NCBI RefSeq assembly: GCF_902713615.1
Contig: NC_052146.1
Span: 17,066,938-17,130,937 of the forward strand
DNA: 64,000 bases
From: Scyliorhinus canicula
Taxonomy: Eukaryota
Reading direction: 5' to 3'
Position numbers and translations under genes: made by a program. Each line of letters starts with the position of its first letter. Within the stretch, counting starts at the first letter, position 1. Under the pieces are notes generated by a model, which saw only the letters and a program-made list of their open reading frames with translations, was not told the DNA's origin and ran no database searches. Of the stretch, positions 506-54,406 are shown one piece after another.

Positions 506-677
506 AAATGCCTCCACTGCCGTTTACTGCTGCCGTAACCCAGCCCAGGAAACTCACTTCCAAAACCTTGCGTCTCCTGCCCGGAACTCTGGTATTCCAA
601 ATCCCCGTGACAGCGCTTTCGCTCTACCGGGGAGAGCCAAGCAGAAGCTGCTAAAATACGGAGTAAACCTGCTCTGA
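506..677 (+). CDS. HPS4: HPS4 (BLOC-3 subunit), last coding exon
   Basis: Polypyrimidine acceptor ctctttctccaacag ends at 505. The exon reads (R)[56 protein letters not shown], matching the HPS4 C-terminus as I recall it (…KAKQKLLKHGVNLL). ASPHD2 at the other end of the window supports this by synteny. Confidence 0.9.
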
Positions 678-2699
678 GTCGCACCGTTCTCGGAGATTTG
701 TCAGCAGTATTCAGCGGACTCTGTTTTTTAATGAACAAATGGAGAACAATGTAACTTTTTTAAGTCGCGCCCACTCGATTTACAATCAGTCGCTGATGCA
801 CTCAGGTACCATGGGCTGCCTCCTGCTCCAGGAGATTTGCTTAAATTGGCTAATAGTTAGAGATCCCAAGGACTTTTCTTTTGTTTGTTTTGTAGTGGGA
901 AAGGGTCGACACGGTGGCGCAGTGGTTAGCACTGCTGCCACACGGCGCCAAGGACCCGGATTCGATTGCACATTCTCCCCGTGTCTGGGTGGGTCTCACT
1001 CCCCCCCCCCCCCTCCCCAACATAACCCAAAAAGATGTGCAGGGTAGGTGGATTGGCCACGCTGAATTGCCCCTTAATTCGAATTTTGTTTTTAAAGAAG
1101 CTGTTTTAAGGAGCATCTTAAAGGAGGTTCGAGAGGGGGCGAGATGTTGGTGGTGGGGGGAGGGAGACAGGGGTTGAAATTTCAGAGTTTAAAAAAAATA
1201 AATTTTAGAGTACCTAATTCACTTTTTCCAATTAAGGGGCAATTTAGCATGACCAATTCATCTACCCTGCATATCTTTGGGTTGTGGGGGTGAAACCGAC
1301 GCAAACACGGGGAGAATGTGCAAACTCCACACGGATAGTGACCCAGGGCCGGGATCGAACCTGTGACACAGGCAGCAGGGGTAACCCACTGCACCACCGT
1401 GCTGCCCTAAATTTCAGAGTTTACAGTCTACTATATTATTCCAATTTTCAACACTCTTATTCATGTAATCATTGCAACACTAGTAGAATCACTTTGACAT
1501 TTTCATTTCTCTTGTGAAATTCTACAGGTTCTCACAGACTTTTTACGTTTAGTCCAGGTATTCCCGCGTCTTGCTGACTTTTCAGACCAGAAACTGCCAA
1601 TTGAACACATCACTTGGGTGCATTTTTCGGGGAGAGGAGCCCTAGCTGTCCCCCGTCCCTGCCAGCTCAGCAACACAGAGGCTAATTTTTTTTTTAAACA
1701 AACAATTTTATTGAGGTATTTTTTGGCATTGTAAATAGTTACAGATAACAGAAATATGCAAACAACACCGAAAAACCAACACTTCAATGCACGCCGGTGC
1801 CCAGGCATCCTGCAATGATGTTTTTTTTCTCTCTGTTAGCTTTTTGCACTTTACACAAATGTTGTGTATCAGATCAGAGACATTAGGAATTTTGCCAGTT
1901 AGCAATGGTGGCTGATTTTCTTAACATTTATAGATAACTTAAGTTTTTCCATAAATCAATAGTGGTATAAATGAAAGAGAGGGAATAGTATGCAGCATTC
2001 GTACCGAATCGAACGCAATGGCGTGCATGTTTATCAGATATAAAATGATAGTCCGGAATTTCCCAGCCCCCCCCCCCCCCGCGGTGCATTTCCCCACGGC
2101 GGAGGGCGTTCGCCGTTGCTGCCAGTGGAATATCTCGCAGGCCCGCCCAAGTCAATGGCAATTTGCCTGACTCGCCCGTTCCATAACTGCTGGAATAGGT
2201 GATAAGACAGGTAGCTGAAGTTGAAATTTATTGTAACGGTTATGAGTTTGACCGGCCTTTTCTTATTTCTTAAAGCTTTTGAGCTGGCTTCTTCTACCGT
2301 TACAGCCGGTGGAAAATCCAGCCTATTATTCAGTCAGGCTTTAGCAATGATTGTATTTGTTGATTTTGTGAATTTTACTGAACCACCTTACCTCCATCCC
2401 TGTGGGCATACTTGGCTATCAATTTACTCTCTCTTTTCCACTGACAAAGAGCGGCAACATGGCACAGCTGCCCATTGGCACAATATTACTGCCCGCAGTA
2501 CTGCACCAACCACAGAAGCAACTATATTCCTTTTGTCACTACAGCTTGCTCTGACTCAGCTGCTGTACCTGCCCTCAACACTTCTGCCTCACTAGCCAAG
2601 GGCATACCGATGTGTAGTCTGCATCGTACGACCCTAGCTCCATCTAGTCTGGCTACGGTAGACATGTAGTCCTCTATAACTTCAGTATTTCTTGATAGT

Positions 2700-3510
2700 A
2701 TTGATTGATTTATTGTCACGTGTACCGAAGTACAGTGAAAAGCATTTTTCTGCGGCCAAGGGAACGTACACAGTACGTACACAGTAGACAAAAAAGAATA
2801 AGCGACAAAATACAACGACAAATACCGTATATACTCACGTATCATGCGACTTTTGAAAACCTAAATTGTAACCTAAATTTGGGGGGTCGCATGATACGCG
2901 AGATACAAAATTTGCGGGTGTGAAGTGCTGGCCAAGATTAGGCTGTTAGGCTGTTAAGCAGACCATATCCATTTACGGTAAGTCAAATAGTACCCAGTAG
3001 TTAATGAAACTATTATATTTATTTTTGGACATAATGAAATATAAAACAGGAATACATACGTAGGTTAATTAACATTTAATAAAATAAAAACTATTAAAAC
3101 AAACACATTGTGTTGCCATACACGTTAGTACAACCGTAAAATGTGTCTTTTCATGCCCTGTAGTTTTGATAAAAATACTTTTCTCGCTGAGTTTATTAAC
3201 GGTTGAGTTTGATGGCATATCAAAATTCACGGGTGTCTCATCCATGTTTCCAATGCACGATAACTTATAGCTGTTAGCTTTGCGATGTTTGATTACAAAT
3301 GTTTGAAAACTAGTCACTTTTTCTTCTAATTCTTTTGGGAGTTTCTGTGCAATTTTTGTTTTTCTTCTCGCATGGTACATAAGATATATGATAAAAATCA
3401 TGTTTTGGGGACGAAAATTTAGGGGTCGCATAATACGCGAGATCGCAGGATACGCGAGTATATGGTAAGTAATTGGCTACAGTGCGGAACGAGGACCAAA
3501 CAAAGCAAAT
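2700..3510 (-). mobile_element. LINE 3' tail fragment interrupted by the pogo element
   Basis: ttgattgatttattgtcacgtgtaccg… is the reverse complement of an AATAAA plus short-repeat tail. The sequence appears to resume after the TA at 3466. Confidence 0.4.
2825..3465 (-). mobile_element. Internally deleted pogo-family (POGK/Passer-like) DNA transposon
   Basis: TA on both sides; imperfect TIRs ccgtatatactcacgtatcatgcga / tcgcaggatacgcgagtatatgg. Carries a transposase fragment RRKTKIAQKLP…IGNMDETPVNFDMP…KTTGHEKTHFTVVLTCMA (first catalytic Asp motif of the DDE_1 domain). Confidence 0.85.
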
Positions 3511-5419
3511 ATGACATGAAGCTTATACGAAGCATTATACCACATGAAGCAAATACCTTGCATTCAACACTGCAATTTGACTGATCAATTATTGCTGTAC
3601 TACGAGTTGCTAATTTTCTTTCCCCTAACTGTCAGATTGCCTCAACACTGCAGGATATTTGTTCTAATGGTAATTTGTAGAATTTTATATTGAAAATGTG
3701 CTGTATGTGGTCTTTTGAAAAATGCCTTCTGCCCAGGCTGCTCACATCTGTGCAATAAATTGAATATACTCTGCTCCCTGTGCCTTTCTTGGACTGAAGT
3801 ATAAAATTGAGGGGATGGGGAGGGGAGGAGTGGACTTTTCTGCAGGATTGATGTTAAATGTTTCAGCTTACAGTGCATTCTGTGTCAACCCTGAGGCTTC
3901 CACCAAACTCTTGGTTAGCATCAACATGGGCGGCACGGTAGCACAGTGGTTAACACTGCAACTTCACAGCACCAGGGTCCCAGGTTCAATTCCCGGCTTG
4001 GGTCACTGCCTGTGCAGAGTCTGCACGTTCTCCCCGTGTCTGCGTGGGTTTCCTCCGGGTGTTCCAGTTTCCTCCCACAAGTCCTGAAAGACGTGCTGTT
4101 AGGTGAATTGGGCATTCTGAGTTCTCCCTCCGCGTACCTGAACAGGCGTCGGAATGTGGCGGCTATGGGATTTTCACAGTAACTTAATTGCAGTGTTAAT
4201 GTGAGCCTACTGATGAATGAAAATCACTTATTGTCACGAGTAGGCTTCAAATGTAGTTACTGTGAAAAGCCCCTAGTCGCCACATTCCGGCGCCTGTCCG
4301 AGGAGGCTGGAATTGAACTATGCTGCTGGCCTGCTTTCAAAGCCAGCGATTTAGCCTTGTGCGAAACAGCGATATCTCCCATGGTGAACTGATCCTTTAG
4401 CCTGGCAAGACATCTCCTAAAGTGTCACAGCAGCGTTACCAAGCAAATGCAGACACCAAACCACCAAAAATTATAGTAATAATAATAGCAATTACTTACT
4501 GGTAGGCCATTATTGAAAATATCACTGCCGACTTAACTCATATTCAGTATCCAGTGGCTTCGTCTGGATGTGTACATGTCGGTGACTGGCGATCTATCGT
4601 GAACCAAATTGCAGAGTTACAGTGCAAAAGGCCATTCAGCCCATCATATCTGCACCGGCTCGCCAAATGAGCAACTCACCTAGTTCTGTAATCCTGCACA
4701 TTGTATATTTTCAGATAAAAGTCAATTCCCTTATGAATGCCTCAGTTGGGGCAGCATATTGGTTAGCACGTCTGCCTCACAGCGCCAGGGACCCTGGTTC
4801 AATTCCGACCTCGGGTGACTGTGGTATTTACACGTTCTCCCCGTATCTTGCGTGGGTTTCCTCCGGGTGCTCCAGTTTCCTCCCACAGTCCAAAGATGTG
4901 CAGGTTAGATTGATTGGCCACATTAAATTGCGCCTTAGTGTCCAAAAAGGTTAGTTGGGGTTACGGGGATGGGGCAGGGGGTTCGGGCTTTGGTAGGGTT
5001 CTCCTTCAGAGGGTGGGTGCCTGGCAGCATCTGTGGAGAGAAATAGAGTTTACAGCGGAATTGTTCGGCCCATTCCGCTGTCAGGATCTCTCTGTTCGAC
5101 CGATGGTGGCCCCTTCCCCCGGGAGCAGGTTACCCGGTAGCAGAGGGCGTCGGTCACGCAAAACCCTGAGGACGTTGGCAGGTCTGAAAGTTCCCGCCTC
5201 CGACCAATGGCGGGTCCCCTTGGTCACTGGGGGGGGGGGGGGGGGGGGGGCGCAGAAAATCCCACCATACTTTGCAAGTCCAATATGACTCTTTGGGTTT
5301 TGAAGAGTCTCTTTAAGTACTGTAGTAGATAAAAAACATTTTGATGGGCTGAATGGCTTCCTCCTACACTGTAAATTCTATGATTTCAGCTGCTCACAGC
5401 TTTCACATAGAAGCAGAAT

Positions 5420-6012
5420 TCATTTTTTAAAATTTTATTTGGGTATTTGTAATTTCTATAATAGTAACGACAACAGCAACATAAACATGGTACAAAAAAC
5501 ATTTCCATCCCTATCACTTTCTTCACACCCCCAATCAATGAAACAATAGCCTAACCACCCCATCTAGATTTCTGCCTCCGTTGACGAACGGCTGCCACCT
5601 CCGGACGAACCCTAACATTGACCCTCTTAGGGCAAACTTTATTTTCTCGAGACTGAGATACCCAGCCATGTCACTGGCCCAGGTCTCTAATTTTGGGGGC
5701 TTCGAGTCCCTCCACATTAACAAGATCCGTCTCCGGGCTACCAGGGAGGCAAAGGCCAAAACGTCAGCCCCCCTGGACTCCCGGCTCTTCCGACACTCCA
5801 AAGATCGCTCACTCCCCACTCTGGACTCGGCACCACCCGTGTTTTTAGCCCGTGCACATAACCTTAGCGAAAACCTGCCATAACATATGGACATGGTTTG
5901 CTGGACCTCCCGCGTACCTTGCACACCTGGCCTCTACCCCAAAGAACTTGCTCATCCGGGCCACCGTCATGTGTGCCCAGTGGACTACCTTAAATTGTAT
6001 CAGGCTAAGCCT
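5420..6012 (-). mobile_element. L1-clade LINE, 3' end of ORF2 (rearranged/deleted)
   Basis: RLSLIQFKVVH-AHMTVARMSKFFGVEARCARYAGGPANHVHM-W (CCHC-type region) and ARRRILLMWRDSKPP…EKIKFALRGS…RWQPF, typical of L1 ORF2 C-termini; A-rich tail. Confidence 0.8.
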
Positions 6013-7439
6013 GAGAAGTGGAATTCTAGCCTCATAGGTCTGTCCTAATGTTTTTACATTAAACACTAATCCTGCCATTTGCATTCAATTAGATGTTCAA
6101 TGCAGTTTCTACATGGGAACAAAGCTTGGCTGAATTTACATTAAGGAGCAGCAGGAGAGCCAAAGAATTGGCTGTTATTTATTCTTAGAACTGTTATCAC
6201 CTCATTTACTCTCATGCGCTGTGGTTGGGGGGATCATTCTGCATATGAATAGTGGACTGATCGGTTTTTACACTGGAAATTTTCGACACTGTTCTGAGGA
6301 GCCACTGATTTTCTTTCTATCTTAAAAGAGCTTTAGTTTAGGACTGTCTCCATGAAATTATTGTTAGTGATATCTGTTGGATCTGCACTATACTCTATTT
6401 AGCAGAGAGGTTAGCACATTTGAAATGAACTGCATTGCAGAGGATTGTGAGATGTGTTAAAAGATTCATCCACTAATCTCACCAACAATGATTTATAGGT
6501 TCATATTTATACATAACAGAAAGAAAATAAATAACATTCATCTATTAGTTAGACCTCAGATGGAGTATTGTGCATAGTTCTGGGCGCCACACTAATAATA
6601 GAACATAGAACATACAGTGCAGAAGGAGACCATTCAGCCCATCGAGTCTGCACCGACCCACTCAAGCCACCCTATCCCCATAACCAAACAACCCCTCCTA
6701 ACCTTTTTGAGGGTTATCTTTATTAGTGTTCTAATAATGTTTATTATTGTCACAAGTAGGTTCACATTAACACTGCAATGAAGTTACTGTGAAAATCGCC
6801 ACTCACCGGCTCCTGTCAGGGTACATGGAGGGAAGTTTCAAAATGTCCAGTTCACCGAACAAGCACGTCTTTCGGGACTTGTGGGAGGAAACCGGAGCGC
6901 CCGGAGGAAACCAACTCAGACACGGGGAGAACGTGCAGACTCCACACCGACAGTGATCCAAGCGAGAATCGACCCTGGCGCTGTGAAGCAACAATGCTAG
7001 CCACTGTGCTACCGTGATGTAAACGCATTGGAGAGAGCGCAGCAGAGGTTTACAAAAGGATAAATTGGAGAGGTCGGGACTGTTCTCCTTGGAGAGCAGG
7101 CTGAGAGGAGATTCGTTAAAAACCACGAGGGGCTTGACAGAGTAGAGAGGCAGAAACTGTTCTTGCTGATTGTAGGATCAAGAACGAGGGGACCCAGATT
7201 GAAAGAAGCAAATGTGAGAAAAAAGATTTTCACACAGTGAGTGGTTCGGGTCTTGAATGCACAGCCTGGAAGTGTGGTGTAGGCAGGTTCAATTGAAGCA
7301 TTCAATGAGCTGATTATTTGAATGGAAACAATGTGCAGGGCTACAGGGGAAAGGCAGAAGAATGGCACTAAGCCATAATGCTCATTTGGGGAACTGGTGC
7401 GTGGAGCTGAATGACTGCACCCATAACAATTCTGTATGT

Positions 7440-7562
7440 GATGCGGAGATGCCGGTGTTGGACTGGGGTGAGCACAGTAAGAAGTCTTACAACACCAGGT
7501 TAAAGTCCAACAGGTTTGTTTCGAATCACTAGCTTTTGGAGCACAGCTCCTTCCTCAGGTGA
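7440..7562 (-). mobile_element. Solo copy of the same Penelope-like repeat, hammerhead GAAA mutated to AAAA
   Basis: Matches one arm of the 41.1 kb and 42.8 kb elements. Confidence 0.7.
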
Positions 7563-8049
7563 GAATTCTGCATGTGATTAGTACTTTCTTAGAATTATTT
7601 CACAAGAAGTAGGGGCGGTACGGTGGCTCAGTGGTTAGCACTGCTGCCTCACTGCCCTGGTTCGGTTCCGACCTCGGGCGATGTCTGTGTGCAGTTTGTA
7701 TGTTCTCCTCGTGTCTGCGTGGGTTTCCTCCGGGTGCTCCGGTTTCCTCCCACAGTCCAAAGATGTGCAGGTTAGTCGGATTGGCCATGTTAAAATGACT
7801 GTTCAGGGATGTGCAGGTTAGGTTGAGGGGATAGAGCAGGGTGAACATTGTAGCGTGCACATTCAAAGGGTCAGAGCAGACTTGTTGGGCCGAATGGCCT
7901 TCTTTTGCACTGTAGGGATTCTGAGGTGTGAACGTCACTAGCTAGTCCAGCATTTATTGTTCATTCCCGATTGCCCTTGAGAAGGTAAGCTGCCTTCTGG
8001 AACAACTGCAGTCCGTGTAGTGTACATACACCCACAGTGCTGTTGAGGA

Positions 8050-10020
8050 GCACTTTACCAGCCAGAGAAATGTTAAGACGTGTAGTCACTGTTGACACAG
8101 CTAGGCTGTGAGGATTGTTAAATGCCAGGAGGAAAATGTTAAATTTGTGGTATACGATGGCCATGTAAGAAGTTTTGGCTGATGGTAGCTTCACAGGCAG
8201 CGTTTTGGGTACGCCGAAGTTTAAGGAAAGTGGAAGATGAAAAATTGGCCTAGCCACTATTAGAATAATTCAGTTTGGAGGTGCCAACGGCACGAATGGA
8301 GGTTTCAGTGGGAATGGGCTGGTGCAGAGGTGACAAATGTCGTGACGGTGAAAGTAGATGGTTTTTGTGAGGGACGGGCGAGAAGGCTGGAAGCTCAACT
8401 TCGGGGGGTCAGATAGATTTCTGAGCTTGCCAACAGTCTGATTCAACTGGAGCCAGTGGCCAAAGACGGGAATGGAAGGGTGTGGGGTGGGGGGGGTGCA
8501 TCTTATCTGAGACTGCATGTCAAGCACGGAACTGGCAATAAAGAAGCAGCGGAGGGGGTCAAGAAAAGATAAGAGAGGACGGGTTTGATATCATCAGTGT
8601 ACATATAGAAACTGATCACAAGATTCTGGATGCGCCTAGTATCAACGGCTGCAAATAGTGAAGAAGGAAGAGGAGAAATAGTGTATCGTAGTCCTATAGA
8701 TTACAATGGGTTCAGTGATGAATGTGGCGCAATCGAAAAATGAGCAGAGACTTCCAAGTGGGAAAGTTGAACATAGATTTGAGCAGGATCAGGACTTTGA
8801 AGAACTTTCCAAAGAAGCCCTACAATGGAAAAGGAGGCCATTTGGCCCATTGGTTTTCATGACCCTCTGAACGAGCACCTTACCTGGGCCCACACCCTGC
8901 AACCCCACCTAACCTGCTCATTCCTGGACACTAAGCGGCCATTTTTACCATGGCCAATCCACCTAACCTGCATATCTTTGGACTGTGGGAGAAAATTGGA
9001 GCACCCGGAGGAAACCCACGCAGAGGGAGAAACTGCGAAAGTGCAAACTCCACACAGACAAGTCACCCAAGTGTGGAATTGAGAGTCCCTGTTGCTGTGA
9101 GGCAGCAGTGCTAAGCACTGTGCCACCCATGAAAGAGGGGGTTCGCCATGACAGGAATTTGCAAGGAAAAAAGGGTTAATGGAGCTTTGATGATGAGTGG
9201 GGAGAGGGTGATGGTGGTAGTTTTGAACAGGAGGACAACAGCAGTTTAAGAGAGGAAAATAGTTAGCACAACCGCCTCACGGCGCTGAGGTCCCAGGTTC
9301 GATCCCGGCTCTGGGTCACTGTCCGTGTGGAGTTTGCACATTCTCCCCGTGTCTGCGTGGGTCTCACCCCCACAACCCAAAAACGTGCAAGCTAGGTCGA
9401 TTGGCCACGCTAAATTGCCCCTTAATTGGAAAAATGATTGGGTACACTAAATTTATTAAAAAAAAGAAGAAAAAAAAAAGAGGAAAATATTTTAGCATGG
9501 TGGCCAGGAAGGGAGGTTGTGTATTCAACAAATTCAGGGGCAGCACGGTGGCACAGTGGTTAGCATTGCTGCCTATGGTGCTGAGGGCCCAGGTTCGAAT
9601 CCCAGGCCTGGGTCACTGTCCGTGTAGAGTTTGCACATTCTCCCCGTGTCTGCGTGGGTTTTGCCCCCACAACCCAAAGATGTGCAGGTCAGGTGGATTG
9701 GCCATGGTAAATTGCCCCTTAAATGTAAAAGATAATTGGGTACTCCAAATTTATATTTTAATTAAAAAATAAATAATTTGGTAGCAGTGGGGTTGAGGGA
9801 GCAGGAGGTCAACCTCACAGGTAAGGTTCAGCCACGTGGGGATATATGGAAATAGAGAAAGATGCGAGTCCAAGCAATGAGATATAATTGGTTAATGATA
9901 CTATGAAGTACTCAGAGGTGACCTTACCATTGATTAGGCTATGGAAACAGAGATTACATGAATGTGCAAAGCTCAAAGGGTTACCATAAATGTGAAGCAG
10001 AGTTGAAACGGAGAGGGCAA
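8050..10020 (-). mobile_element. Highly decayed LINE (L2-like) remains broken by several SINEs
   Basis: Purine-rich + strand with gtttgatatcatcagtgtacat (reverse complement resembles the RT YxDD region). No intact frame. Confidence 0.4.
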
Positions 10021-13000: not shown

Positions 13001-13292
13001 AATTGTTCCTTAATTGGAAAAAATGAATTGGGTACTCTAAATTCAAAAAATAAATCTGGTAGACATCACTCCCTGTCTCACCCAGAGAGTACGCGATATA
13101 TCAGAGTACAACTAGTGCTCGTGAACCGTATTCTACAGAAGAATTTGGAGAGAAGAGGGAAGTAACTGAGGAAAAGGGTGGTGTGGCAAAGATTCACCAA
13201 GTTGTAATGCAAAAACTCTTCGGAATATCAAGGTCTTTTTACAGGATTTTGTAACACATCACACTAAAGCCTTCTAATTGAACCAATTCTTA

Positions 13293-13298
13293 TTTATT
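13293..13298 (-). terminator. Candidate polyadenylation signal (AATAAA) of the novel gene
   Basis: tttatt on + at the end of a ~1.3 kb SINE-free, AT-rich stretch downstream of the stop codon. Confidence 0.45.
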
Positions 13299-14149
13299 TA
13301 ACAAAAAATCTTTTACATTTACATAAATAGATTCAATCTGTATTTATAGGTTCTGTATGTTTACAAATTCTGTACATAATTTTCGTAAAGTGCATATGAC
13401 AGTGAGATAATGCGCATGACATTACCGTTAGACGCTAATCTGGAAATGGGACAGCAATATTACTGTCAAAAGGTGTTTATGAAGTTATTGCGAACTGGCA
13501 GAAACTCCATATTAAAAATCCATATTAACATTTAAATATTTGTACACCAATATCACAGTGTAACCTCTAGGCCATTATTGATGTGTTGGCTGTGATATGG
13601 CCTGAATAACAATTTATAGAATTAATTATTCTTAAAAAAATTATCCTCAGAGCCTCCGAGTGCCCTTAGTTCGTTGCCCTAAGAATTGTTTCGACTCCCA
13701 TGGTTTAGTGAGATTTAATGGTCGGATATGATCATTTGCTGGCATGTCCTTCCATTTTGCACTCCTCCAGTTATTTAACACGTTGTGGGAGGTGGGTGTT
13801 GGGTAAGTTGGTGATTTGATCCACGCACAACACCCATTAACTCATAACTGACAGAAATTGACGCAGGACGTATACGAGTTTTATGCATCGTGTTCTGTAG
13901 AATTATACTGTAAACTGGGTAAATCCCACTGTGAAGGAGCAGACAATGGGCGAGATACTCTGGTCTGATGAATGGGATTTCCCATTGTAACCACCCACTC
14001 CACCGCAAAATCTGCTGGCCGAGCTGCGCTGCTGGCAGGAAGATTGGGTCAGAACGACCGGAGAATTCCGGCTAATGCATCCCTCAACCGTTTCAATGGG
14101 GCAACTCGTCCAGTCACTAACTGGATACTTGCTAATCATCTCTTGATGA

Positions 14150-14467
14150 GATCCCCTGTTAATGAGCGAGTCCAACCATCAGATCGCCTGTTAATGAGCG
14201 AGTCCCACCATCGGATCCCCTGTTAATGAGCGAGTCCCACCATCAGATCGCCTGTTAATGAGCGAGTCCCACCAACAGATCGCCTGTTAATGAGCGAGTC
14301 CCACTATCGGATCCCTGTTAATGAACGAGTCCCACCATCGGATCCCTGTTAATGAGCGAGTCCCACCATCGGATCCCCTGTTAATGAGCGAGTCCCACCC
14401 ATCGGATCCCTGCTAATGAGCGATCCCACCATTTGGGATCCCCTGTTAATGAGCGACTCCCACCATC
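14150..14467. repeat. Minisatellite, about 10 copies of a ~32-bp unit (gatcccctgttaatgagcgagtcccaccatcg)
   Basis: Directly visible head-to-tail units with few substitutions or indels and no unique spacers. Confidence 0.95.
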
Positions 14468-14630
14468 TGCTATCAAGCTGCTGCTAACTGGTCAAACTGC
14501 TGCTTCCAGCGTAGCAAGGAACTGAACATCAAGCAATGTCCCCACTATCCCAGGATGCCTCAGCTGCCTGCACATTGGCTGAAGAGGGGGCCCTGATGGT
14601 GCGTATCCCTCTTTAAAATGTAGCATGTTT

Positions 14631-14844
14631 TTAAATGTAACCAATGGCCATGAAAGGTGCACGTAATACACTGACCCCGTGCTCACTGCACGACAGAGGA
14701 TTATTGTCCTGAGAGCATTTCAGTATCAGGGAGAACTCAGTGGTCCCCCCACCATCCATGAAATGTGCCTCCTTCATCATCTTGAAGAGGAACAGAGTAT
14801 CGAAGGCCAGCTCGGACTCTCCATGCTTGTGCCAGGTGGCGTTT
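14631..14844 (-). CDS. Exon 3 (terminal) of the uncharacterised secreted protein
   Basis: Acceptor tctttgtgtttcag; phase 2 matches exon 2. Reads (R)NATWHKHGESELAFDTLFLFKMMKEAHFMDGGGTTEFSLILKCSQDNNPLSCSEHGVSVLRAPFMAIGYI* (TAA). The three exons total 843 nt = 280 aa plus stop. Confidence 0.85.
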
Positions 14845-17447: not shown

Positions 17448-17607
17448 CTTGTGGTTTTGCTAACAGTGATGCCCTGCCTTTTTGCCCTTATCTCTGCCTC
17501 CAACACCACCCTGTCTGGGTTGGCAATGTGCACGTGCAGCTGAGCTCGGAGTACGTCCAGATTCAGATACTCTGGCCTCAGGAAGAACTCCATCTTCCTT
17601 TCATTAT
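17448..17607 (-). CDS. Exon 2 of the uncharacterised secreted protein
   Basis: Acceptor ctttcttgtttcccag and donor AG|GTAAGG. 160 nt, phase 1 to phase 2, open frame (H)NERKMEFFLRPEYLNLDVLRAQLHVHIANPDRVVLEAEIRAKRQGITVSKTT(R). Not in the ORF track. Confidence 0.85.
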
Positions 17608-19643: not shown

Positions 19644-20112
19644 GCCCAATTAAACGCCCTTGGTAACCTTTTATCCTCTTACACGGGTATCCCAGTTTGC
19701 AACAGATGTAGAAACGCCTCATGAAGACCATCAGGTGCCAGAGTGGGAAGACCTTCCAGGGGGGCTCGGTGGAGGCGGTGGTGACAGTCACCTTGTACAG
19801 GACATGCCTGGAGAGTGAGGCTGGCGAGTGGCTGGCTGCTGATGACCAGCTCTCACTCGACCTGGAGCAGTGAGAGTGCCTCAGCCCGGCCACGGTCTCC
19901 CTCCTGCCCATCCGCTTGTTGCTGCCCCTCTCCCAGGGCTCTTCTTCCCTCAGCTCCATCTCCAGGCTGCTGCTGCTGCCGCCGCTGAGGAACCGGTAGA
20001 GCAGCTCCTCGTCCTCGGGAGGGAAGGAGCTGGTGGGGCTCCCCTGCTGGGGATGGGCAGGCAGGGCCCAGGGGAGCTGCAGCAGGTACAGCAGCAACAA
20101 GGCTCGAAGCAT
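19644..20112 (-). CDS. Exon 1 of an uncharacterised secreted protein (280 aa, TGF-beta-prodomain-like)
   Basis: Kozak-type accATGC at 20112; hydrophobic signal peptide MLRALLLLYLLQLPWALPA; KRMGRR basic site; RRFYICCKLGYPCKRIKG motif; strong donor C|GTAAGT at 19643. 469 nt, ends in phase 1. Confidence 0.88.
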
Positions 20113-20745
20113 GGTCTCTCTCTCTCTCTCCCCCAACAAGTGGCTGCTTCTGCACTGGGAAGGTCACCAGCTTCTAAACTCCTTGCCTGTGGAAGAGACA
20201 GCAGTGATCACTGATCCTCAGACAGAATCATTTATGTTGGTGCCAGGAAGGTATTCCTCTCCCACAAGGGTTTCAGCATTCCCAGGGTGTGTCTGGCCTT
20301 CTGGCGTCCACCCATGTTAAAAGACATTTGCGTATGAATGGGATTGAAAAGCTACAATAAGACTTCTACTTAATGGTTTTCACTGCCGCGCCCCCCCCCC
20401 CCCCCCAAGTGGGGGTTGGCAGCACTTAACAAAATTGGAAACGGTGCTATTGATTTGGGGGAATGAAGCAAATGGAGGTAACATCATTCCAGGTTTGGAG
20501 CTGATTACTAAATCACTTCTTGGTTTACAGCTGGGTTAAACATGGTTACAATGGAGTTTGCACATTCTCCCCGTCTTTGCATGGGTTTTGCCCCCACAAC
20601 CCAAAGACGTGCAGGGTAGGTGGATTGGCCATGCTAAATTACCCCTTAATTGAAAAAAAAAAGAATTGAGTAGTCTTATTTTTAAAAAATATGGTTACAG
20701 AATTATTTGCCCAGATCCCACTTCACAGCCGGCCTCCAGAACGAT

Positions 20746-41214: not shown

Positions 41215-41224
41215 AAACTTCATT

Positions 41225-43688: not shown

Positions 43689-45589
43689 CTGAGTGAGCCT
43701 AAGTACGGTGCTCATTCAGAGGGTCAGTACATATTCGATGGGCTGAATGGCCTCCTTCTGCACTGTAGGGATTCTATCAAATCTATGAAATGTATATTGC
43801 AAATATAACGTGTAATTGTAAGTTCTGATAAAAGATCACAGCCTGAAATGTTAATTCTATTTCTCTCTCCACAGATGCTGCCAGACAGACTGAGTATTTC
43901 CGGCCTTTTCTGTTTTTGCAACTTTAGTGAGGCGCCCGAGTGTCTCAAACTGTTCCGAAATTGAACTGTATTGTACTTATATGCATCGTCAAATTTGAAC
44001 TTATGTAATACACTTTCACAAATGTTATGAATAAAATGTGCATTAAAATAAAATAGCGACCACACTTCAGAAACAACTTGATGGCTGAAAAACACTGGGG
44101 AAATCCTGAGGTCAAGAAAGGTGCTACATAAATGCAAATTCTTTGTTTTTCTAGCTGAGATTCCAATTTCAGTCGCACCGCTCTGACGGGGTTTGGGGCG
44201 AGGCGAGACGATAGGCCCGAGACCTTTCTACGGGGGATGTTGAGAATTCACGTAAAGGGTTAATCATCCTCTTTGAAGTGACTGGTTCCTTTGCCGTGCT
44301 GACGGGCATCTTCCATGAGGTCAGCTGATCTACCCTCTTGGAGAACCCAAAGCTCGGGCTGGGGTGGGTTAAGAGGAGGAAAATTCGGCGTTTGGACTGT
44401 TGGTTATTTCAACATTTCAAGCTGTGACATTCCAATCAATGCAAACTCATTTTTACATGTTGTACCTATTTGAACAGTAGAAGCACTCAAAAAACAAAAT
44501 TCCAGATTAAGGAAAAATCAAATGACCCCAGATAATGATGACCACAGTATCATACAAGACTATTAGCAAAGGTCATATCTTTAAAACAATTCAAAAATAT
44601 GATTTAATCATACTGCAATCCCCCCTGCCCTGAAAAGTCATTCATTTCAACCAAGTACATTTACAGGTTTGCAACTCGGAAACGCACTGGCCCCAAACCC
44701 CCTTCCCTACATCTGAAAAATAGATCATATTCATACACTTTTTAAACTAGCTTTTTTAAGGCATGTAAAAGCATCTTGGGCCTTGGGCGAAAGGAATGCA
44801 TTAGACGAGACACAGGACATTGTGCAGCAACTGCATTACTGCTGTATGCAGAGCAGGCCATTGACTCGAGTGCTTTAAAACAGTTCTTCTGGGGCGGCAC
44901 GTGGCGCAGTGGTTAGCACTAGAACTGCAGCACTGAGGACCCGGGTTCGAATCCTGGCCCTGAGTCACAGTCTGTGTGGAGTTTGCACATTCTCCCCGTG
45001 TCTGCGTGGGTTTCGCCCCCACAACCCAAATATGTGCAGGGTAGGTGGATTGGCCACGCTAAATTGCCCCTTAATTGGAAAAAAAATTGGGTACTCTAAA
45101 TTTAAATTTAAAAAAAAAGTTCTTCCCACATTTCATACAGCATTTATTTATTTATAAGTAAGGTCAATATTCAGGCACCTCCTATGCTATGCTGAGATAT
45201 TCAGTAGAGTCTTACACATTGCAGCCACCTCTATTATACCACACTTATTGATGCCTTACAACAAGCTTCTCGTTACTTCTTACTATGGAACATACCAAAG
45301 GTGTTGCCATCTCAAAGCTCTGGCTTAAATATAATGATAATAATAATCTTTATTGTCACAAGTAGGTTACATTAACACTGCAATGAAGTTATTGTGAAAA
45401 GCCCCTAGTCGCCACATTCCGACACCTGTTTGGGTACACAGAGGGAGAATTCAGAATGTCTAAATTACCTAACAGCACGTCTTTCATAACAGGGAGAGTG
45501 TGCAGACTCCACACAGACAGTGACCCAAGCCTGAGTATAATCAATCATCTTAATTTAGCATGAATTCCTTTAAAAAAAATTAACCGGTG

Positions 45590-46255
45590 ACCAGGCGGCG
45601 TGGGCGGAGCAGACATCTGCACCACCACCTCCCGCTGGCACGGGGCCCCCTGGGAGGAGACTGAGGAGATCCTGCCTGTCGATGATCCCGGTGGCGGGAT
45701 CAAGGCAGCCCTGGGTTGGTTGGTGGTCCCGTGTCGCCCGCCGCACTCAGTGTGGTGGAGGATTCGGGCCCGGAGGGCGACTATCCGAAGGCTGTCAGCC
45801 GCCCAGTGTCGGGAGCGCAGGGTGCACGAGACACTCTGTAGCGGGGTGCGGGTCTCACTCGTGCCTGACACTGTGTCGCCACTCACCCCCTCTGGGGGAC
45901 TTCCAGAACCTGGCACATCATAATTGAAGGCTCTTTTATTTTTCTGCCTCCGTAGATAGTTCAGGCAGTGCCTTATTGCCCCCCCCGCCCCACCAACACC
46001 CCGACTCATTCCCTCCCCAACACCCTCCTTTCCCCTCTCTCCCCACCACCCCCTTCCTTTCCTTTCTGTTGGTACAGAGGCGAGGGTATCTGGTCTCTCC
46101 AGCGCAAAGTTTAGTGCTTGTACCATTTGTTTTTTCAGAAATGTGTTGCGAACTGTTTTAATAATCAGAGTACCCCCCTCCCCGTACATTGGTACTGAGC
46201 GGAGGGTACCCTGTTTCTCTGGCCTTGTATATGTTTTTTACTGTTTTAATAAAAA
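45590..46255 (+). mobile_element. Degenerate Tx1/L1-type LINE 3' end
   Basis: GC-rich, frameshifted segment with IKAAL-W… and …RRLSAAQ…RDTL-RG resembling Tx1-clade ORF2 C-termini, followed by a pyrimidine-rich tail ending aataaaaa. Confidence 0.45.
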
Positions 46256-47903
46256 GATATGGCCATTCCACATAACCTGCACATCTTTTTGGGTTGTGGG
46301 TGTGGGACCCACGCAGACAAGGGAAAATGTGTAAACTCCACACAGACAGTGACCCAGGGCCGGGATCGAATCCAGGTCCTCTGCACCGTGAGGCTGCAGT
46401 GCTAACCACTGCGCTGCCTTGTGCACCTTCCTTCTTGAGGGTCGGCGGCTAATTGCAATAAAATCACCAGTGCAGAAGGAGGCCATTCAGCCATCCTGCC
46501 TGGCTCGGCAAATAAGCAATTCCTTTCGTGCCACTCTCCAGCCACAGAGCAAACTTCCACAAACAACAATGGCATAAGAAGATCATCTGTCTGTTTTGGT
46601 GATGTCTACTACTAACATTTGCCTTTCCTCGATCATCCCTATGGTAAGCAAAATCACTCCCTGGTTGTGATCACTTAACTCAGCACAGCTCCTGGAGCAA
46701 GTCTAAGACTCATGTCTGGCCTTGATGCATCCCGAAACAATAAAATATTTTGTTAAGATTCCCTCAATCCTATAAAGAGTGCCACATTAACATTCCACAG
46801 GAGCCATGGTCTGACCTCCCAACAGAAAGGTTTTAAGCCTGGAGATAGAAAAAGATCACATCACAGATTGAGAAGCCTGAAGGAAAGACAAAAGTCACTG
46901 CAGGTTCCTGAATGTTTGAAAGTGAACAAAAGGTTCAGATGCGAGCCTTAAATACAGTATACATCTCAAAAAAGGACTAACCATTCATTCTTTTTCTAAT
47001 GCTGATCAATGTGGTGATTTTCCAGCATTGTTCACACTAGGTAGGTCACAGCACAGAGGTGGGCCATAGATCCGATAATTGAATGGTTGAAAGATTGCAG
47101 AGAGGTCAAGGGAGCTGGGTGGTCAGATGAAAATAAGATGCTTTCTCTGGCTATGACTGGGACAGTTTTAGTGCTGTGACCAGTTAAAATCAAGAATGCC
47201 GCGACTCCAAAAGATGCAATCACACACTGGCCATTCTTTTTAGGACCTGGTTATTCTTAACTCCCCCATGCGCCACTAGGAAACTTTGACTTTAATGTAC
47301 ATTTAACTGATCTCCTCTCCCCCGCCCCCTCCCCTGAGCAAAGAGTCAGTGCTTTCAGAAGAGGAGAAACGTTTGGGACTAGACGTTTTACTTGCCACTT
47401 CCATCCCCGAGGAGTAAGAAAATCCAAAAGATTCTCAATCCCAACAAATGCCAGTTTTAGTTCTCTGTTTCGCAGCAATCTTTCCCCATCCCTATCCCAC
47501 CCTCCCATCCCAAAAATAAAGCCTTTTCATTCCTTTTAGGCAATTTACCTTAAAAGCAAAGTACCATCTTTTTAAAAAAATAAAGTAGAACCACTACAGT
47601 GCAGCCGGGAGTCTGCACCGACCCTCTGAAGGAGCACACGACCTAGGCCCAATCCAATCCTCCACCCTATCCTCGCAATTCCAATAAGGGCAATTTAGCA
47701 TGGCCACTCCACCTAACCTGCACATACTTTTGGACTATGGGAGGAAACCAGATCACCCGGTGAAAACCCACGCAGACACGGGGAGAATGTGCAAACTCCA
47801 CACAGTCACCCGAGGTCGGAATCGAAGAGTACCCAATTCTTTTTTTTTCCCAATTAAGGGGCAATTTAGTATGTCCAATTTACCTGCCAGGCACATCTTT
47901 GGG

Positions 47904-47904
<1 letters not shown>

Positions 47905-47941
<37 letters not shown>
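47905..47941. repeat. (TG)n microsatellite expanded inside a SINE
   Basis: Replaces the usual ttgtgggg of the SINE body; a similar expansion lies at 28883-28909. Confidence 0.9.
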
Positions 47942-48639
47942 TGAGGGTGGTGGAGACCGACGCAGACACTGGGAGAAGCTGAAAACGCCACAAGGTCGAG
48001 ATCGAGCCTGGCTCCTGGGTGCTGTGCAGCAGCAGTGCTAACCACAGCGCCACTGTGCTGCCTGCAAAGTAGCATCGGTAATGATGGTTGATCTTACTGC
48101 AATTTGAAAACAAGAATGCTTCCAAAATTGGACAAATTCCCTGCCAGTATTCAGGTTAACTCAGGTTTTGCTGAAAGCTGGATAAATTCGGGCCAAAAAT
48201 AGGAAACGATTTTCAGCATCCAGTCGATGTGTTTCCAGAAGACAATTATGAATTCAAAACTGCACATTATGGTTTTGCAGAACCAGCTGTGCTAGCTAAA
48301 AATTGAAAACTGATCCTGATGCAAGCAAGAATAAACTAGATCAGGCAGATTTTGCGGTACCCAAATTCAGTGCAATTGAGGTATTACTGGAAATCAGTAA
48401 GGACTGTCCAGATTTTGAACAGTATTCTAAATAACCTGAGTGAAAGCAATATTAACAATCTTTCATTCTTATAGTGCTTTCAACACAGCAAAATGTCCCA
48501 AGCTGCTCTTCTGAGCAGACAAAAACTGTCACGGAGCAAAAGGAGGAAATACAAAGATAGGTGAGAGTTGGCTTTATGCCCAAATATGTGCAGGTTAAGT
48601 GGATTGGCCATGATCAATGCACAGGGTTACGGGGACAAA

Positions 48640-49012
48640 GAACAGTAAAGCAGAGGAACAGGCCCTTTGGCACTCCAAGCCTGTACCAGTCATGATACCA
48701 ACCTTGGCCAAAACCCTCAGCACTTCCTTGTGCCGAATCCCTCTATACCCATCCTATCCATGATTTTGTCAAGATGCTTTTGAACGCCGTTAATGTATCT
48801 GCTTCCACAACCTCCCCTGGCAACGTGTTCCAGGCACTTACCACCCTTTGTATAAAAGACTTGCCTCGCCACATCTCCTGTAAATGTTGCCTCACGGACC
48901 TTAAACCTATGCCCCCTGGTGACTGACCCCTTCACCCGAGGAAAGAGTGCCTGCTCATCCAGTCTATCCATGCCCCTCATAATCTTGTAGACCTCTATCA
49001 GGTCACCCCTTA
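48640..49012 (-). mobile_element. CR1 LINE 3' fragment nested in a SINE tail
   Basis: MRGMDRLDEQALFPRVKGSVTRGHRFKVR. Confidence 0.8.
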
Positions 49013-52000: not shown

Positions 52001-52248
52001 GCATGCTCATATTGAAAGAAACAGGGCATTTGCTGCCCAGCAAACGGAAACTACTGATGTAGTTTTCAACAGTTTTGATTTCTTTTGGAGATTACTTTTG
52101 AGCATGATTGGGATACCCTGCCAACCAGCACAAAGCTATAGAATAAATTTCTGCCTGTGTCACTGGGAGACAGAGGCACATTAATTTTGGGATGAATACA
52201 GTAAGCATCAATTTACAAATAAAAACTCAGCAAGATTAGAACGTGTGG

Positions 52249-54296
52249 TTTATTTCTCCAAATCTTGCACCAGCACAACTCCACATGTACACATGCAATA
52301 CACGCTAGCTATCATATATAGTAAAGTGCATCGATAAAAGTAACTCGCCTCAAGGTTTGAGGGGAATCAGTGGCCAGGTTGTGCAAACAAAATTCCCAGG
52401 CCAACAGAGGTAAACGTGCCCGTGAAAATATAGTCCATCAAATGGGAGTCTCTCAGTAATAGGCAAGCATAACACTGCATTATGAACAGCACTGATGTTA
52501 ATCTAAATTACGTGGCACTGTATTAGCTTCTCTTAAAATCGAGTTCACATAACGCTAATTCACTGGTGGCCCAAACAAAAATAACACAATACCACATTTA
52601 CAATCTGAATAGACTAATGTTGCACTAAAATCATGTACACAACAATGACACAAGGAACCTAGGCTTGAATGCAGCTGATGCAGGATGGTAGTCTCCCCTT
52701 CTCTCTTGTCTGAAATCAGTTCACAATGTCTCAGTCAACACAAATCCACGGTACTAAAGTGCCAGAAATTCAGTACAGTGGTTGACTTCCTTTGCCTTTT
52801 GATGGGACAGTCTTATTTGGAGTTCATTGGGGCACACAGTGCCAGAATTAGTTATTTAAAACATGGAAGGAGTGATGGGGGAAAGAGGCGAAGGGAAACA
52901 ACTGGCAGTTCCCTTCTTGGGTGGGGCTCATGCACATTGTTCTAGCATAATGGAGTTTATATCTAATCCTACACTGCACGATACCGCACCTGAACCTGAA
53001 TTGCTTCAGACACTTCACGCAAGAAGGAACAAAAATCTTCAAGCGCGGTTAGTCAGCCTGCCACTTTGATGAACACAAAAGGAATAAAATATAATTCCAG
53101 TTTTAATCTCAAAGTACATCGAAAAAAATCATTAAAAATAATGACCCGAAGTTAAGTACCTTTAGATTCAAGTAAGAGAATTTATTGTATCGATCCATGA
53201 GATTAAAAATAAATGTAAACCTGTTTATAGTGAAATCCAACAAAGATAACTTCTCATTCACTCCCATTATATGGCTATCCAACAGATTAAATCATTTCCC
53301 ATTAAATGGGACAATGAGATATACCTTAATTACTGTTTATGTAGAATTTGCATTCCAAAAATAATAGCTCTAATAATCACAGGATAACTTTCCTGTGTTA
53401 GTTTCTATCTTTATATCTCGCATGCCCTGCAAGGTCAGTCCATTGTCTCATTTTCCCTGATGACCACAGAGCAGCTTGTGTGTAACTTTCCTTTTACCTC
53501 ATTAATTTCTCTTTTTTTTTGTTGCAAAATTCATCCTTTTTCAGTGAATATTTTAAGTGCCATTTTGATTCCACTGCAAAATACATTAAAACCGCCGAGA
53601 TACACAAGCGGGTCAATAAGCAGTCTATGGAAATCACATTGATCCAGAAACTTTGACCCAGGGCGGAACACATTTTTTCAAAAACATGCTCAATTGGGAT
53701 TTGGCTCCACTCACCTGTACACAGACGCCTGATCCCCAGGAGTGCCTTTGTAGAATTCTTGGAAAGCTATCGGATTCCTCCTCCCCAACACCCCCCCACC
53801 CTCGCCCCCACACCCCACTCCCCAAAAATGAACGTAGATTACCAGATGAGGAGATCTGGACTAGAAAACCTTCACAGTGTTTCAACTGGACTAGCTCTCG
53901 CAGAACACATGGCTTCAAATTAAAAACTTTATAGCTCAAGGCATTACAGGAAATTGTCTTTTGACTGCAACGTAGCGAGAGAGAAATCAGATAGACAGCA
54001 GTGGCCACCCCACTGACCAGTGGGATGGAAAGGAAGTTGACCCATTTTGTTAAAAAAATAAATCAGAAGCAATAAGTAAATAAATCTTGGACTCTTTGCT
54101 CCACCTATCCATTAACATGGCACTGCGTGAATTTTCAGTAAATAAAGCTTGTATTTTCCTTAGTCTGCCCACTTATTCCTTTTTGATGAATGGAAGGAGG
54201 ACAACACGTCTGATGATCCAAGAGCCCTGGTTCTGGTGTTCCGCTGCTTCTGAGATTGGCCAATCCGGAGAAAAAATAAAAGGACAAAACAAAAAG
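52249..54296 (-). other. ASPHD2: Probable ASPHD2 3' UTR ending near AATAAA at 52249-52254
   Basis: About 2 kb without recognisable SINEs in an otherwise SINE-saturated window, directly after the stop codon; tttatt on + at 52249. Confidence 0.5.
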
Positions 54297-54406
54297 TCAG
54301 CGGCCCGGAGAAAAGATGAAGTCCAGAGCCTGGCGCTCAGTGGCAGCAACGTTCGGGTGCCACAAATCAATCATGAAGACCACCCGTGGACCTTCTTCAC
54401 TTGGAC
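54297..54406 (-). CDS. ASPHD2: ASPHD2, last coding exon
   Basis: Acceptor ccttttttgtgattgtag; reads (G)[35 protein letters not shown], matching the ASPHD2 C-terminus (…[23 protein letters not shown]). Phase 1 agrees with the upstream exon. Confidence 0.92.

What the first reader, a model, noticed from the sequence alone, without database searches (positions are those of the whole stretch)
677..54297. An extra gene between HPS4 and ASPHD2, which are direct neighbours in mammals
Seen: HPS4 ends at 677 (+) and ASPHD2 ends at 54297 (-), convergent, with the novel gene between them. Known: human HPS4 and ASPHD2 are adjacent and convergent on 22q12. Inference: the secreted-protein gene is an ancestral jawed-vertebrate gene lost on the way to mammals, which would explain why it has no name. 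The conserved flanks give a fixed address for dating the loss.
Basis: partly seen in the sequence, partly recalled or inferred. Interest (0 to 1): 0.72.

Follow-up and report, generated by a model that had tools for sequence, protein, structure and literature searches.

The report
Anamniote gene lost between HPS4 and ASPHD2
Between the HPS4 and ASPHD2 genes of this catshark-like genome lies an intact gene for a secreted protein folded like the pro-piece of a TGF-beta growth factor but with no growth factor attached; sharks, bony fishes, lungfish and amphibians keep it at this address, and reptiles, birds and a mammal have lost it without trace.

Summary
The HPS4 last exon stops at 677 (+) and the ASPHD2 last exon stops at 54297 (-). 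Between them lies an intact three-exon gene on the minus strand (20112-19644, 17607-17448, 14844-14631; all introns GT-AG). It encodes 280 aa and is 94.6% identical to an annotated Scyliorhinus torazame protein.

The gene is not nameless. It is the orthologue of zebrafish si:ch211-170d8.2, which is annotated "uncharacterized" everywhere. I found no paper on it.

Orthologues occur in sharks, rays, chimaera, sturgeon, bowfin, many teleosts, lungfish, newt, caecilian and frogs. None of the 30 hits to cluster representatives or the 61 hits in the word-indexed search is from an amniote.

Synteny holds. In bowfin the order is HPS4-gene-ASPHD2. In milkfish the gene follows HPS4. In a caecilian and in Xenopus laevis it abuts ASPHD2. 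In turtle, bird, lizard and platypus, ASPHD2 and HPS4 are direct convergent neighbours 3.5-7.6 kb apart, and neither tblastn nor a family HMM finds a remnant there.

So the gene is ancestral to jawed vertebrates, and the most parsimonious date for its loss is the amniote stem. In the catshark the gene is inverted relative to bony vertebrates.

The modelled fold matches TGF-beta-family prodomains (VIA Z up to 9.0). The protein ends where the prodomain arm ends, in all orthologues. No member matches Pfam PF00688. Function is inferred only.

The parts
504..677 (+). HPS4 last coding exon (stop codon 675-677). The exon start is approximate; the acceptor lies near 503-505.
   Evidence: ORF 447-677. 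tblastn matches the terminal exons of the Intu_longin/HPS4 genes of turtle, lizard, bird, bowfin, milkfish and platypus (gene calls).
19644..20112 (-). Exon 1 of the secreted-protein gene. It holds the ATG at 20112-20110, the signal peptide, a variable acidic N-terminal part, the basic KRMGRR site, the first conserved Cys, and the most conserved block (a helix with a CC pair, a further Cys, and GYQGR). The donor is GGC|GTAAGT, phase 1.
   Evidence: Homologues match across this exon. RNA-labelled runs hold 0.65 of the sampled words of 19400-20400.
17448..17607 (-). Exon 2 (160 nt). Acceptor cccag|AT, donor CAAG|gtaagg.
   Evidence: tblastn with P0001 gives 100% identity over 53 aa.
14631..14844 (-). 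Exon 3 (214 nt including the TAA stop at 14633-14631). The protein ends ...APFMAIGYI, at the same place as all orthologues.
   Evidence: tblastn with P0001 gives 97% over 71 aa. The conserved C-terminus is seen in alignment A2.
14150..14467 (.). A 32-bp x 10 tandem repeat about 165 bp downstream of the stop codon, probably within the 3' UTR.
54297..54440 (-). ASPHD2 last coding exon (stop codon 54299-54297).
   Evidence: ORF. tblastn gives 82% to Chiloscyllium ASPHD2, 72% to turtle ASPHD2 and 58-66% to ASPHD1 proteins.
60045..60212 (-). ASPHD2 penultimate coding exon, part of the Asp/Asn beta-hydroxylase domain.
   Evidence: Pfam PF05118, E 1.8e-12. tblastn.

Best explanation
The interval holds one real, intact, three-exon gene for a 280-aa secreted, cysteine-stabilised protein. 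It is the catshark orthologue of zebrafish si:ch211-170d8.2.

The gene was already present at the HPS4/ASPHD2 address in the last common ancestor of jawed vertebrates. Cartilaginous fishes, ray-finned fishes, lungfish and amphibians keep it. In amniotes it was deleted or decayed beyond recognition, most parsimoniously once on the amniote stem, which left HPS4 and ASPHD2 as direct neighbours.

Residues from about 100 to the C-terminus are predicted to adopt the fold of a TGF-beta-family prodomain (alpha2 helix plus arm-domain beta sandwich). The reading frame stops where the arm domain ends, so there is no furin-released cystine-knot growth factor.

Inferred, not shown: it acts outside the cell as a free-standing prodomain-like binder. 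It might be a trans-acting partner or trap of a TGF-beta-family ligand, or it might bind matrix or a receptor. It may also be trimmed at a conserved basic site that lies N-terminal to the folded part.
For: Gene model. Canonical GT-AG introns, a 843-nt CDS, 280 aa, 94.6% identity to S. torazame P0001. The same three exons are recovered in skate, bowfin, milkfish and Xenopus.

Conservation. Six Cys and the C-terminal end are kept in at least 90% of 27 orthologues from chimaera to frogs.

Distribution. Of 30 hits in a HMMER search of 1.84e9 cluster representatives, every named hit is a cartilaginous fish, ray-finned fish, lungfish or amphibian, and every unnamed hit is closest to a teleost member. 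All 61 hits of the word-indexed search are teleosts or cartilaginous fishes, and none has a precomputed Pfam domain.

Synteny.
- Bowfin: COX6A-HPS4(+)-gene(+)-ASPHD2(-)-Sushi/CUB gene. The neighbour is named ASPHD2.
- Milkfish: COX6A-HPS4-gene.
- Caecilian: the gene is followed 6 kb on by a convergent 369-aa Asp_Arg_Hydrox gene.
- X. laevis: ASPHD2 is followed 6 kb on by the convergent orthologue.

Absence in amniotes. In turtle, bird, lizard and platypus, ASPHD2 and HPS4 are directly convergent with gaps of 7.6, 4.4, 3.5 and 6.0 kb. tblastn finds nothing at E<0.1. A six-frame HMM scan finds nothing better than E about 10, while the positive controls score 1e-11 to 1e-43 per exon.

Fold.
- The AF2 model built on 27 sequences has pLDDT 84-94 for residues 141-277 and a mean of 71.
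- The top Foldseek PDB hits are pro-activin A, pro-BMP9, latent TGF-beta1 and the BMP10 prodomain, all at probability 1.0.
- In VIA-align, 26 of the top 27 rows are TGF-beta-family prodomain entries at Z 6.3-9.0, followed by a drop to 4.9.
- The Swiss-Prot AFDB hits are all TGF-beta-family proproteins and align to their prodomain parts.
- The nearest language-model neighbours are TGFb_propeptide families.

No growth factor downstream. ORFs downstream of the stop have no Pfam hit.
Against: No member of the family reaches any score against Pfam PF00688. The family profile finds no PDB sequence even at E up to 10. The TGF-beta-prodomain reading therefore rests on a predicted structure with middling scores: TM 0.3-0.6, and Z 9 is only just above the range the tool's own notes call common.

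The N-terminal 96 residues are modelled with low confidence, so a straitjacket (alpha1 helix plus latency lasso) is not shown.

The only hint is that RNA-labelled runs hold about the exon-1 share of a 1-kb stretch.

Only four amniotes were examined at the locus. A single loss versus several parallel losses cannot be told apart. No function has been tested in any species.
Confidence: 0.85

Rival explanations
1. The gene is a gain specific to sharks or cartilaginous fishes, inserted between two anciently adjacent genes.
For: In the catshark it lies on the opposite strand to the copies of bony vertebrates and sits in a repeat-rich 53-kb interval.
Against: Full-length orthologues with the same three exons, the same six Cys and the same C-terminus exist in bowfin, sturgeon, teleosts, lungfish and amphibians, next to HPS4 and/or ASPHD2.
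Confidence: 0.01
2. Amniotes still have the gene, but it has moved to another locus or diverged so far that sequence profiles miss it. It could even be a named mammalian protein.
For: The family evolves fast outside cartilaginous fishes: 25-35% identity between shark and bony-vertebrate members. Protein libraries hold only predicted proteins. Only the ASPHD2-HPS4 interval of four amniotes was scanned at the DNA level.
Against: The exhaustive HMMER search of 1.84e9 representatives and the 5.8e9-sequence indexed search gave no amniote hit, although the same profile finds frog, caecilian and lungfish members at E 1e-21 to 1e-51. Structure searches in AFDB Swiss-Prot and AFDB clusters returned, besides the family's own clusters (which carry no name or organism in the output), only complete TGF-beta-family proproteins. 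No named amniote protein of the prodomain-only type appeared.
Confidence: 0.07
3. The protein is not a relative of TGF-beta prodomains. The resemblance is a generic jelly-roll or beta-sandwich similarity, and the family is an unrelated secreted protein.
For: There is no Pfam PF00688 hit for any of 27 members and no sequence-level PDB hit. TM-scores are 0.3-0.6. A carbohydrate-binding module scores Z 6.7 among the prodomain rows.
Against: Of the top 27 VIA rows, 26 are TGF-beta-family prodomain entries, from six different ligand types, followed by a clear drop. The Foldseek probability is 1.0 for these hits. The match includes the helix that precedes the sandwich and runs to the very C-terminus. 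An independent language-model search points to the same family.
Confidence: 0.12
4. The catshark copy is a decaying remnant of a complete TGF-beta-family gene whose growth-factor part was recently lost (a truncated pseudogene).
For: The ORF stops where a furin site and cystine knot would follow in a normal family member.
Against: The stop falls at the same position in the full-length orthologues from chimaera to frogs. The frame is intact with canonical splice sites. The protein is 63-95% identical among cartilaginous fishes, with long invariant blocks.
Confidence: 0.01

Closest known systems
Zebrafish si:ch211-170d8.2 and its 'uncharacterized protein LOC...' orthologues in fishes, lungfish and amphibians
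   Same: Same gene family over the full length: the same three-exon structure, six conserved cysteines and C-terminal end, and the same neighbours (HPS4 and/or ASPHD2).
   Different: The catshark copy is inverted relative to the bowfin, milkfish, caecilian and Xenopus copies. The cartilaginous-fish proteins lack the long low-complexity insert that ray-finned fishes carry before the last beta strands. No member has a published function; two full-text searches found nothing.
Prodomains of TGF-beta-family proproteins (LAP of TGF-beta1/2; prodomains of BMP9, BMP10, activin A, myostatin)
   Same: The predicted fold of residues about 119-277 superposes on the alpha2 helix plus arm domain of these prodomains (Z 6.3-9.0, 120-145 aligned residues). 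The protein is secreted. It has a Cys pair near the position of the bowtie cysteines.
   Different: There is no growth-factor domain and no C-terminal furin site. There is no sequence-level match to PF00688. The N-terminal straitjacket is not recognisable. A basic processing-like site lies N-terminal to the fold rather than C-terminal.
Drosophila Anachronism (ana), a glia-secreted glycoprotein that keeps neuroblasts quiescent
   Same: It is the nearest named neighbour by language-model features (score 0.93). The ESM Atlas lists that cluster with the TGFb_propeptide family only, so it is a possible precedent for a prodomain-type protein without a growth factor. It is secreted (PMC5829083, citing Ebens et al. 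1993).
   Different: No alignment, structure comparison or phylogeny was made here, so this is a lead and not a tested relationship. It comes from a different phylum and has a different length (about 350 aa in the Atlas cluster).

Membership tests
si:ch211-170d8.2 orthologue group | Full-length sequence similarity to annotated members | tested here: met
   The spliced 280-aa product is 94.6% identical to S. torazame P0001 and scores 297 bits against the family HMM. Hits to shark, ray and chimaera members have E 1e-33 to 1e-90.
si:ch211-170d8.2 orthologue group | Conserved three-exon structure, six conserved Cys and a common C-terminal end | tested here: met
   Exons were recovered separately in bowfin, milkfish, Xenopus and skate. 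C79, C134, C135, C141, C250 and C259 (P0001 numbering) and the PF...Y end are present in at least 90% of 27 sequences.
si:ch211-170d8.2 orthologue group | Genomic position beside HPS4 and/or ASPHD2 | tested here: met
   Window, bowfin, milkfish, caecilian and X. laevis. Neighbours of the skate and stingray copies lie beyond the 10-kb flanks.
TGF-beta family proprotein (PF00688 prodomain + PF00019 growth factor) | Prodomain arm-domain fold with the preceding alpha2 helix | tested here: met
   On a predicted model only: Foldseek probability 1.0 to pro-activin A, pro-BMP9, LAP and BMP10 prodomain; VIA Z up to 9.0; AFDB Swiss-Prot hits are all family proproteins.
TGF-beta family proprotein (PF00688 prodomain + PF00019 growth factor) | Sequence match to the Pfam TGFb_propeptide model | tested here: not met
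   No PF00688 hit at E up to 1 for any of the 27 members. None of the 61 database members has a precomputed Pfam domain.
TGF-beta family proprotein (PF00688 prodomain + PF00019 growth factor) | C-terminal cystine-knot growth-factor domain released at an RXXR site | tested here: not met
   The ORF stops right after the last arm strand in the full-length orthologues. Downstream ORFs have no Pfam hit. Model residue 277 aligns to the end of the prodomain chains.
TGF-beta family proprotein (PF00688 prodomain + PF00019 growth factor) | N-terminal alpha1 helix and latency lasso (straitjacket) | tested here: inconclusive
   Residues 13-96 have pLDDT below 50. Structural matches start at about residue 119.
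HPS4 (left flank) | Terminal exon homologous to the ends of the Intu_longin-domain HPS4 genes | tested here: met
   E 1e-28 (turtle), 4e-28 (lizard), 2e-27 (bird), 2e-18 (milkfish) and 3e-18 (bowfin), each ending at that gene's called end (gene calls in 31, 32, 49-51). Only the last exon lies in the window.
ASPHD2 (right flank) | Asp/Asn beta-hydroxylase domain, closer to ASPHD2 than to ASPHD1 | tested here: met
   PF05118 at E 1.8e-12. Identity is 70-82% to named ASPHD2 proteins against 54-66% to ASPHD1 proteins.
Drosophila Anachronism-like proteins | Demonstrable homology by alignment or structure | not tested
   The only link is neighbourhood in the language-model search.

The most novel reading that the evidence does not exclude
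The family is a free-standing TGF-beta prodomain that works in trans. It would be a secreted latency or trap factor (or chaperone) for one or more TGF-beta-family ligands in anamniote vertebrates, processed at a conserved basic site on its N-terminal side. Its loss on the amniote stem would then have removed a whole layer of extracellular TGF-beta-family control that fishes and amphibians still use.
Probability: 0.2. Interest if true: 0.75.

Novelty: new variant of a known kind. Interest (0 to 1): 0.5.

Why it matters
The HPS4/ASPHD2 interval gives a fixed, checkable address for a gene that is at least about 450 million years old, is kept by every non-amniote jawed-vertebrate group sampled, and is cleanly missing from four amniotes. 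This is a well-dated gene loss at the water-to-land and amniote transition.

The gene product is also unusual. It has a TGF-beta-prodomain-like fold with no growth factor, it is under strong constraint, and it has no published function, even though zebrafish and Xenopus both carry it and could test it directly. If it modulates TGF-beta-family signalling in trans, it is a missing component in fish and amphibian models and a natural example of what engineered prodomain inhibitors try to do. If not, it is still a clean marker for gene-loss studies, though not a surprising one, since many genes were lost in amniotes.

Tried and rejected
No read-level proof of splicing was obtained.
   - The Rfam scans were run as 1-15200 and 15300-64000.
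   - One local BLAST inside the closed script machine still used the whole window as subject.
   - In one search those places were masked in the database made there (the ASPHD2 search). The HPS4 search in the same call reused the database, which still held the whole window.
3. A shorter exon 1 using the phase-1 donor at 19856 was considered. It was rejected because all orthologues read through to the donor at 19643.
4. Pfam on three members and later on all 27 gave nothing. The family profile against PDB sequences gave nothing.
5. The first AF2 model, built from 7 sequences, was unusable (pLDDT 41). The 27-sequence alignment fixed this.
6. Full-text searches for the zebrafish gene name and for prodomain-only proteins found nothing relevant.
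7. The skate and stingray loci showed no neighbours within 10 kb. So it is not known whether the inversion is shared by all cartilaginous fishes.
8. Frog (Rhinophrynus) and stingray DNA could not be fetched because the files were too large.
9. Rfam at gathering thresholds found no RNA family anywhere in the scanned window.
10. ORFs downstream of the stop codon, and the 214-aa ORF at 45545-46189, have no Pfam domain.


Full report
**Observation**

The window looks like cartilaginous-fish DNA and is dense in SINE-like repeats.

On the plus strand an ORF at 447-677 ends with a stop at 675-677. Its peptide aligns to the very last exon of the genes that carry the HPS4-type Intu_longin domains in several species. 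The matches are turtle (72% over 65 aa, E 1e-28), lizard, bird, milkfish, bowfin and platypus, and each ends at that gene's called end (gene calls).

On the minus strand an ORF ends at 54297. An upstream exon at 60045-60212 hits Pfam Asp_Arg_Hydrox (E 1.8e-12). Both exons are 70-82% identical to proteins named ASPHD2 and only 54-66% identical to ASPHD1 proteins. So the flanks are the 3' ends of HPS4 and ASPHD2, convergent, at the stated coordinates.

**The gene between them**

The gene lies on the minus strand. An ATG at 20112 opens a signal-peptide-like start. Two phase-1 donors in exon 1 were possible, and the homologues decide for the one at 19643.

The model is 20112-19644, 17607-17448 and 14844-14631. 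All introns are GT-AG. The CDS is 843 nt and the product 280 aa, with one stop at the end. The product is 94.6% identical to an annotated Scyliorhinus torazame protein.

The product has six cysteines, one N-glycosylation sequon and a basic KRMGRR stretch upstream of the first conserved Cys.

The only hint is that runs labelled RNA hold up to 0.65 of the sampled words of 19400-20400. That is roughly the exon-1 share of the stretch, not the whole of it.

**Relatives**

A first search found full-length proteins in S. torazame, Carcharodon, Cetorhinus, Chiloscyllium, Hypanus, Amblyraja and the chimaera Callorhinchus. Several carry the name "si:ch211-170d8.2", which NCBI transfers from zebrafish.

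A profile of these was run by HMMER against 1.84e9 cluster representatives and gave 30 hits.
- The named hits are lungfish, newt, caecilian, two frogs, sturgeons, bowfin and many teleosts.
- The unnamed hits are exon-1 fragments whose best matches are teleost members.

A second, word-indexed profile search of 5.8e9 sequences gave 61 hits, all teleosts or cartilaginous fishes. Every one is "uncharacterized" and has no precomputed Pfam domain. No hit in either search is from an amniote.

In the 27-sequence alignment, six Cys, the block around the CC pair and the C-terminal end (..GV.LL.APF.A..Y, then at most three more residues) are kept from chimaera to frogs. The short reading frame is therefore the ancestral state and not a catshark truncation.

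**Synteny**

- Bowfin: COX6A, HPS4 (+), the gene (+), ASPHD2 (-), then a Sushi/CUB gene, all within 23 kb. The neighbour is named ASPHD2 by NCBI.
- Milkfish: COX6A, HPS4, the gene, then an HNF1 gene.
- Caecilian Rhinatrema: the gene is followed after 6 kb by a convergent 369-aa Asp_Arg_Hydrox gene.
- Xenopus laevis: ASPHD2 is followed after 6 kb by a convergent 276-aa gene. Its three exons match the family at E 1e-11 to 1e-32.

In all four species the gene points the same way as HPS4 and towards ASPHD2. In the window it points the other way, in the same direction as ASPHD2 and towards HPS4. A local inversion therefore separates the catshark arrangement from that of bony vertebrates. Its polarity is unknown, because the skate and stingray loci have no neighbour within 10 kb.

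**Amniotes**

Starting from named ASPHD2 proteins I fetched the loci of a box turtle, a passerine bird, an alligator lizard and the platypus. In each, ASPHD2 is followed directly by a convergent HPS4. The gaps are 7.6, 4.4, 3.5 and 6.0 kb, and no gene is called between them.

tblastn with twelve family members found nothing at E<0.1 in these loci. A six-frame scan with the family HMM at maximal sensitivity gave nothing better than E about 10. The same scan recovered every exon in bowfin, milkfish and Xenopus at 1e-11 to 1e-43.

The gene is thus absent without a detectable remnant at its old address in both sauropsids and a mammal. A single loss on the amniote stem is the simplest reading, but parallel losses cannot be excluded with four species.

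**What the protein is**

Sequence methods say nothing.
- Pfam gives no hit for any of the 27 members.
- The family profile finds no PDB sequence.

An AlphaFold2 model on the shallow 7-sequence alignment was useless (pLDDT 41). On the 27-sequence alignment it reached a mean pLDDT of 71, with 84-94 for residues 141-277. Residues 13-96 stayed below 50.

Structure searches gave these results.
- Foldseek against the PDB puts pro-activin A, pro-BMP9, latent TGF-beta1 and the BMP10 prodomain on top, at probability 1.0 and E about 1e-4.
- In the VIA-align re-alignment, 26 of the top 27 rows are TGF-beta-family prodomain entries at Z 6.3-9.0, covering model residues about 119-277. The one other row among them is a carbohydrate-binding module at Z 6.7. 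After these rows Z drops to 4.9.
- The 30 listed Swiss-Prot AFDB hits are all family proproteins, aligned over their prodomain parts.
- The AFDB-cluster and ESM-Atlas shape searches return the family's own clusters first and then GDF and BMP proproteins.
- A language-model search independently lists TGFb_propeptide families as nearest neighbours. Among them is the cluster of insect Anachronism, which the Atlas shows with the propeptide family only.

The model's last residue aligns with the end of the prodomain arm. No growth-factor ORF lies downstream.

The family fails the sequence-level and the architecture-level criteria of a TGF-beta-family proprotein.

**How it may work (inference)**

The protein is secreted and disulfide-stabilised. 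Its most conserved surface is the helix with the CC pair and the following KG.QGR loop. That helix corresponds in position to the alpha2 helix, which contacts the growth factor in latent complexes (established structural knowledge of pro-TGF-beta1 and related structures).

Free prodomains of myostatin and related ligands are known to bind and inhibit mature ligands in trans. A free-standing prodomain-like protein could do the same. I put this at about 0.2-0.3.

A basic site (KRMGRR in sharks, RRWRR-like in many teleosts, RRQKR in lungfish) is kept N-terminal to the first conserved Cys in most orthologues. This suggests proprotein-convertase trimming on the opposite side from classical family members. 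None of this is tested.

**Comparison with the known, and novelty**

The gene is already annotated in many genomes, and UniRef even labels the S. torazame protein as containing a TGF-beta propeptide domain. Its existence is therefore not new.

I found no paper on it. The following appear not to have been described:
- conservation at the HPS4/ASPHD2 address from cartilaginous fishes to amphibians;
- clean absence in amniotes;
- the inversion in the catshark;
- the universal lack of a growth-factor domain.

Gene losses in amniotes are common, so the synteny result alone is of moderate interest. The unusual architecture and the availability of zebrafish and Xenopus orthologues raise it somewhat.

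**Limits**

- There is no read-level evidence.
- The fold comes from a prediction.
- Only four amniote loci were examined.
- The human locus was not examined.
- Coelacanth, gar, bichir and cyclostomes were not specifically checked.

Noticed in passing
window 58859-59458 (+): A 199-aa ORF inside an ASPHD2 intron carries the RT_RNaseH and RT_RNaseH_2 domains (E 3e-25 and 8e-22). It is a fragment of an LTR-retrotransposon pol gene.
   Followed up: partly
window 14150-14467: Ten tandem copies of a 32-bp unit (89% matches) lie about 165 bp downstream of the gene's stop codon, probably in its 3' UTR.
   Followed up: no
An Rfam scan of 15300-64000 at gathering thresholds found no family at all, hammerhead included. 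No permissive-threshold scan was run.
   Followed up: partly
window, throughout (e.g. 914-1177, 3815-4087, 9401-9772, 12764-13165, 62306-62575): Dozens of copies of one SINE-like repeat lie on both strands. Their ORFs read like ...GSTVAQWLALLPHSA..PGSIP.LGHCPCGVCTFSPCLRGF... They fill much of the 53-kb interval and the ASPHD2 introns.
   Followed up: no
L008 9770-15538 (Amblyraja radiata): The annotated skate protein (209 aa) is truncated at its N-terminus. tblastn with the catshark protein finds the missing start of exon 1 upstream of the called gene.
   Followed up: partly
L006 5331-9344 (platypus): A called 292-aa gene without any Pfam family lies just upstream of platypus ASPHD2 on the same strand. 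It does not match the family and was not examined further.
   Followed up: no
window 55257-55392 and 47900-48000: Long (TG/CA)n and (TA)n microsatellites give spurious Cys-Val and Ile-Tyr repeat ORFs.
   Followed up: no
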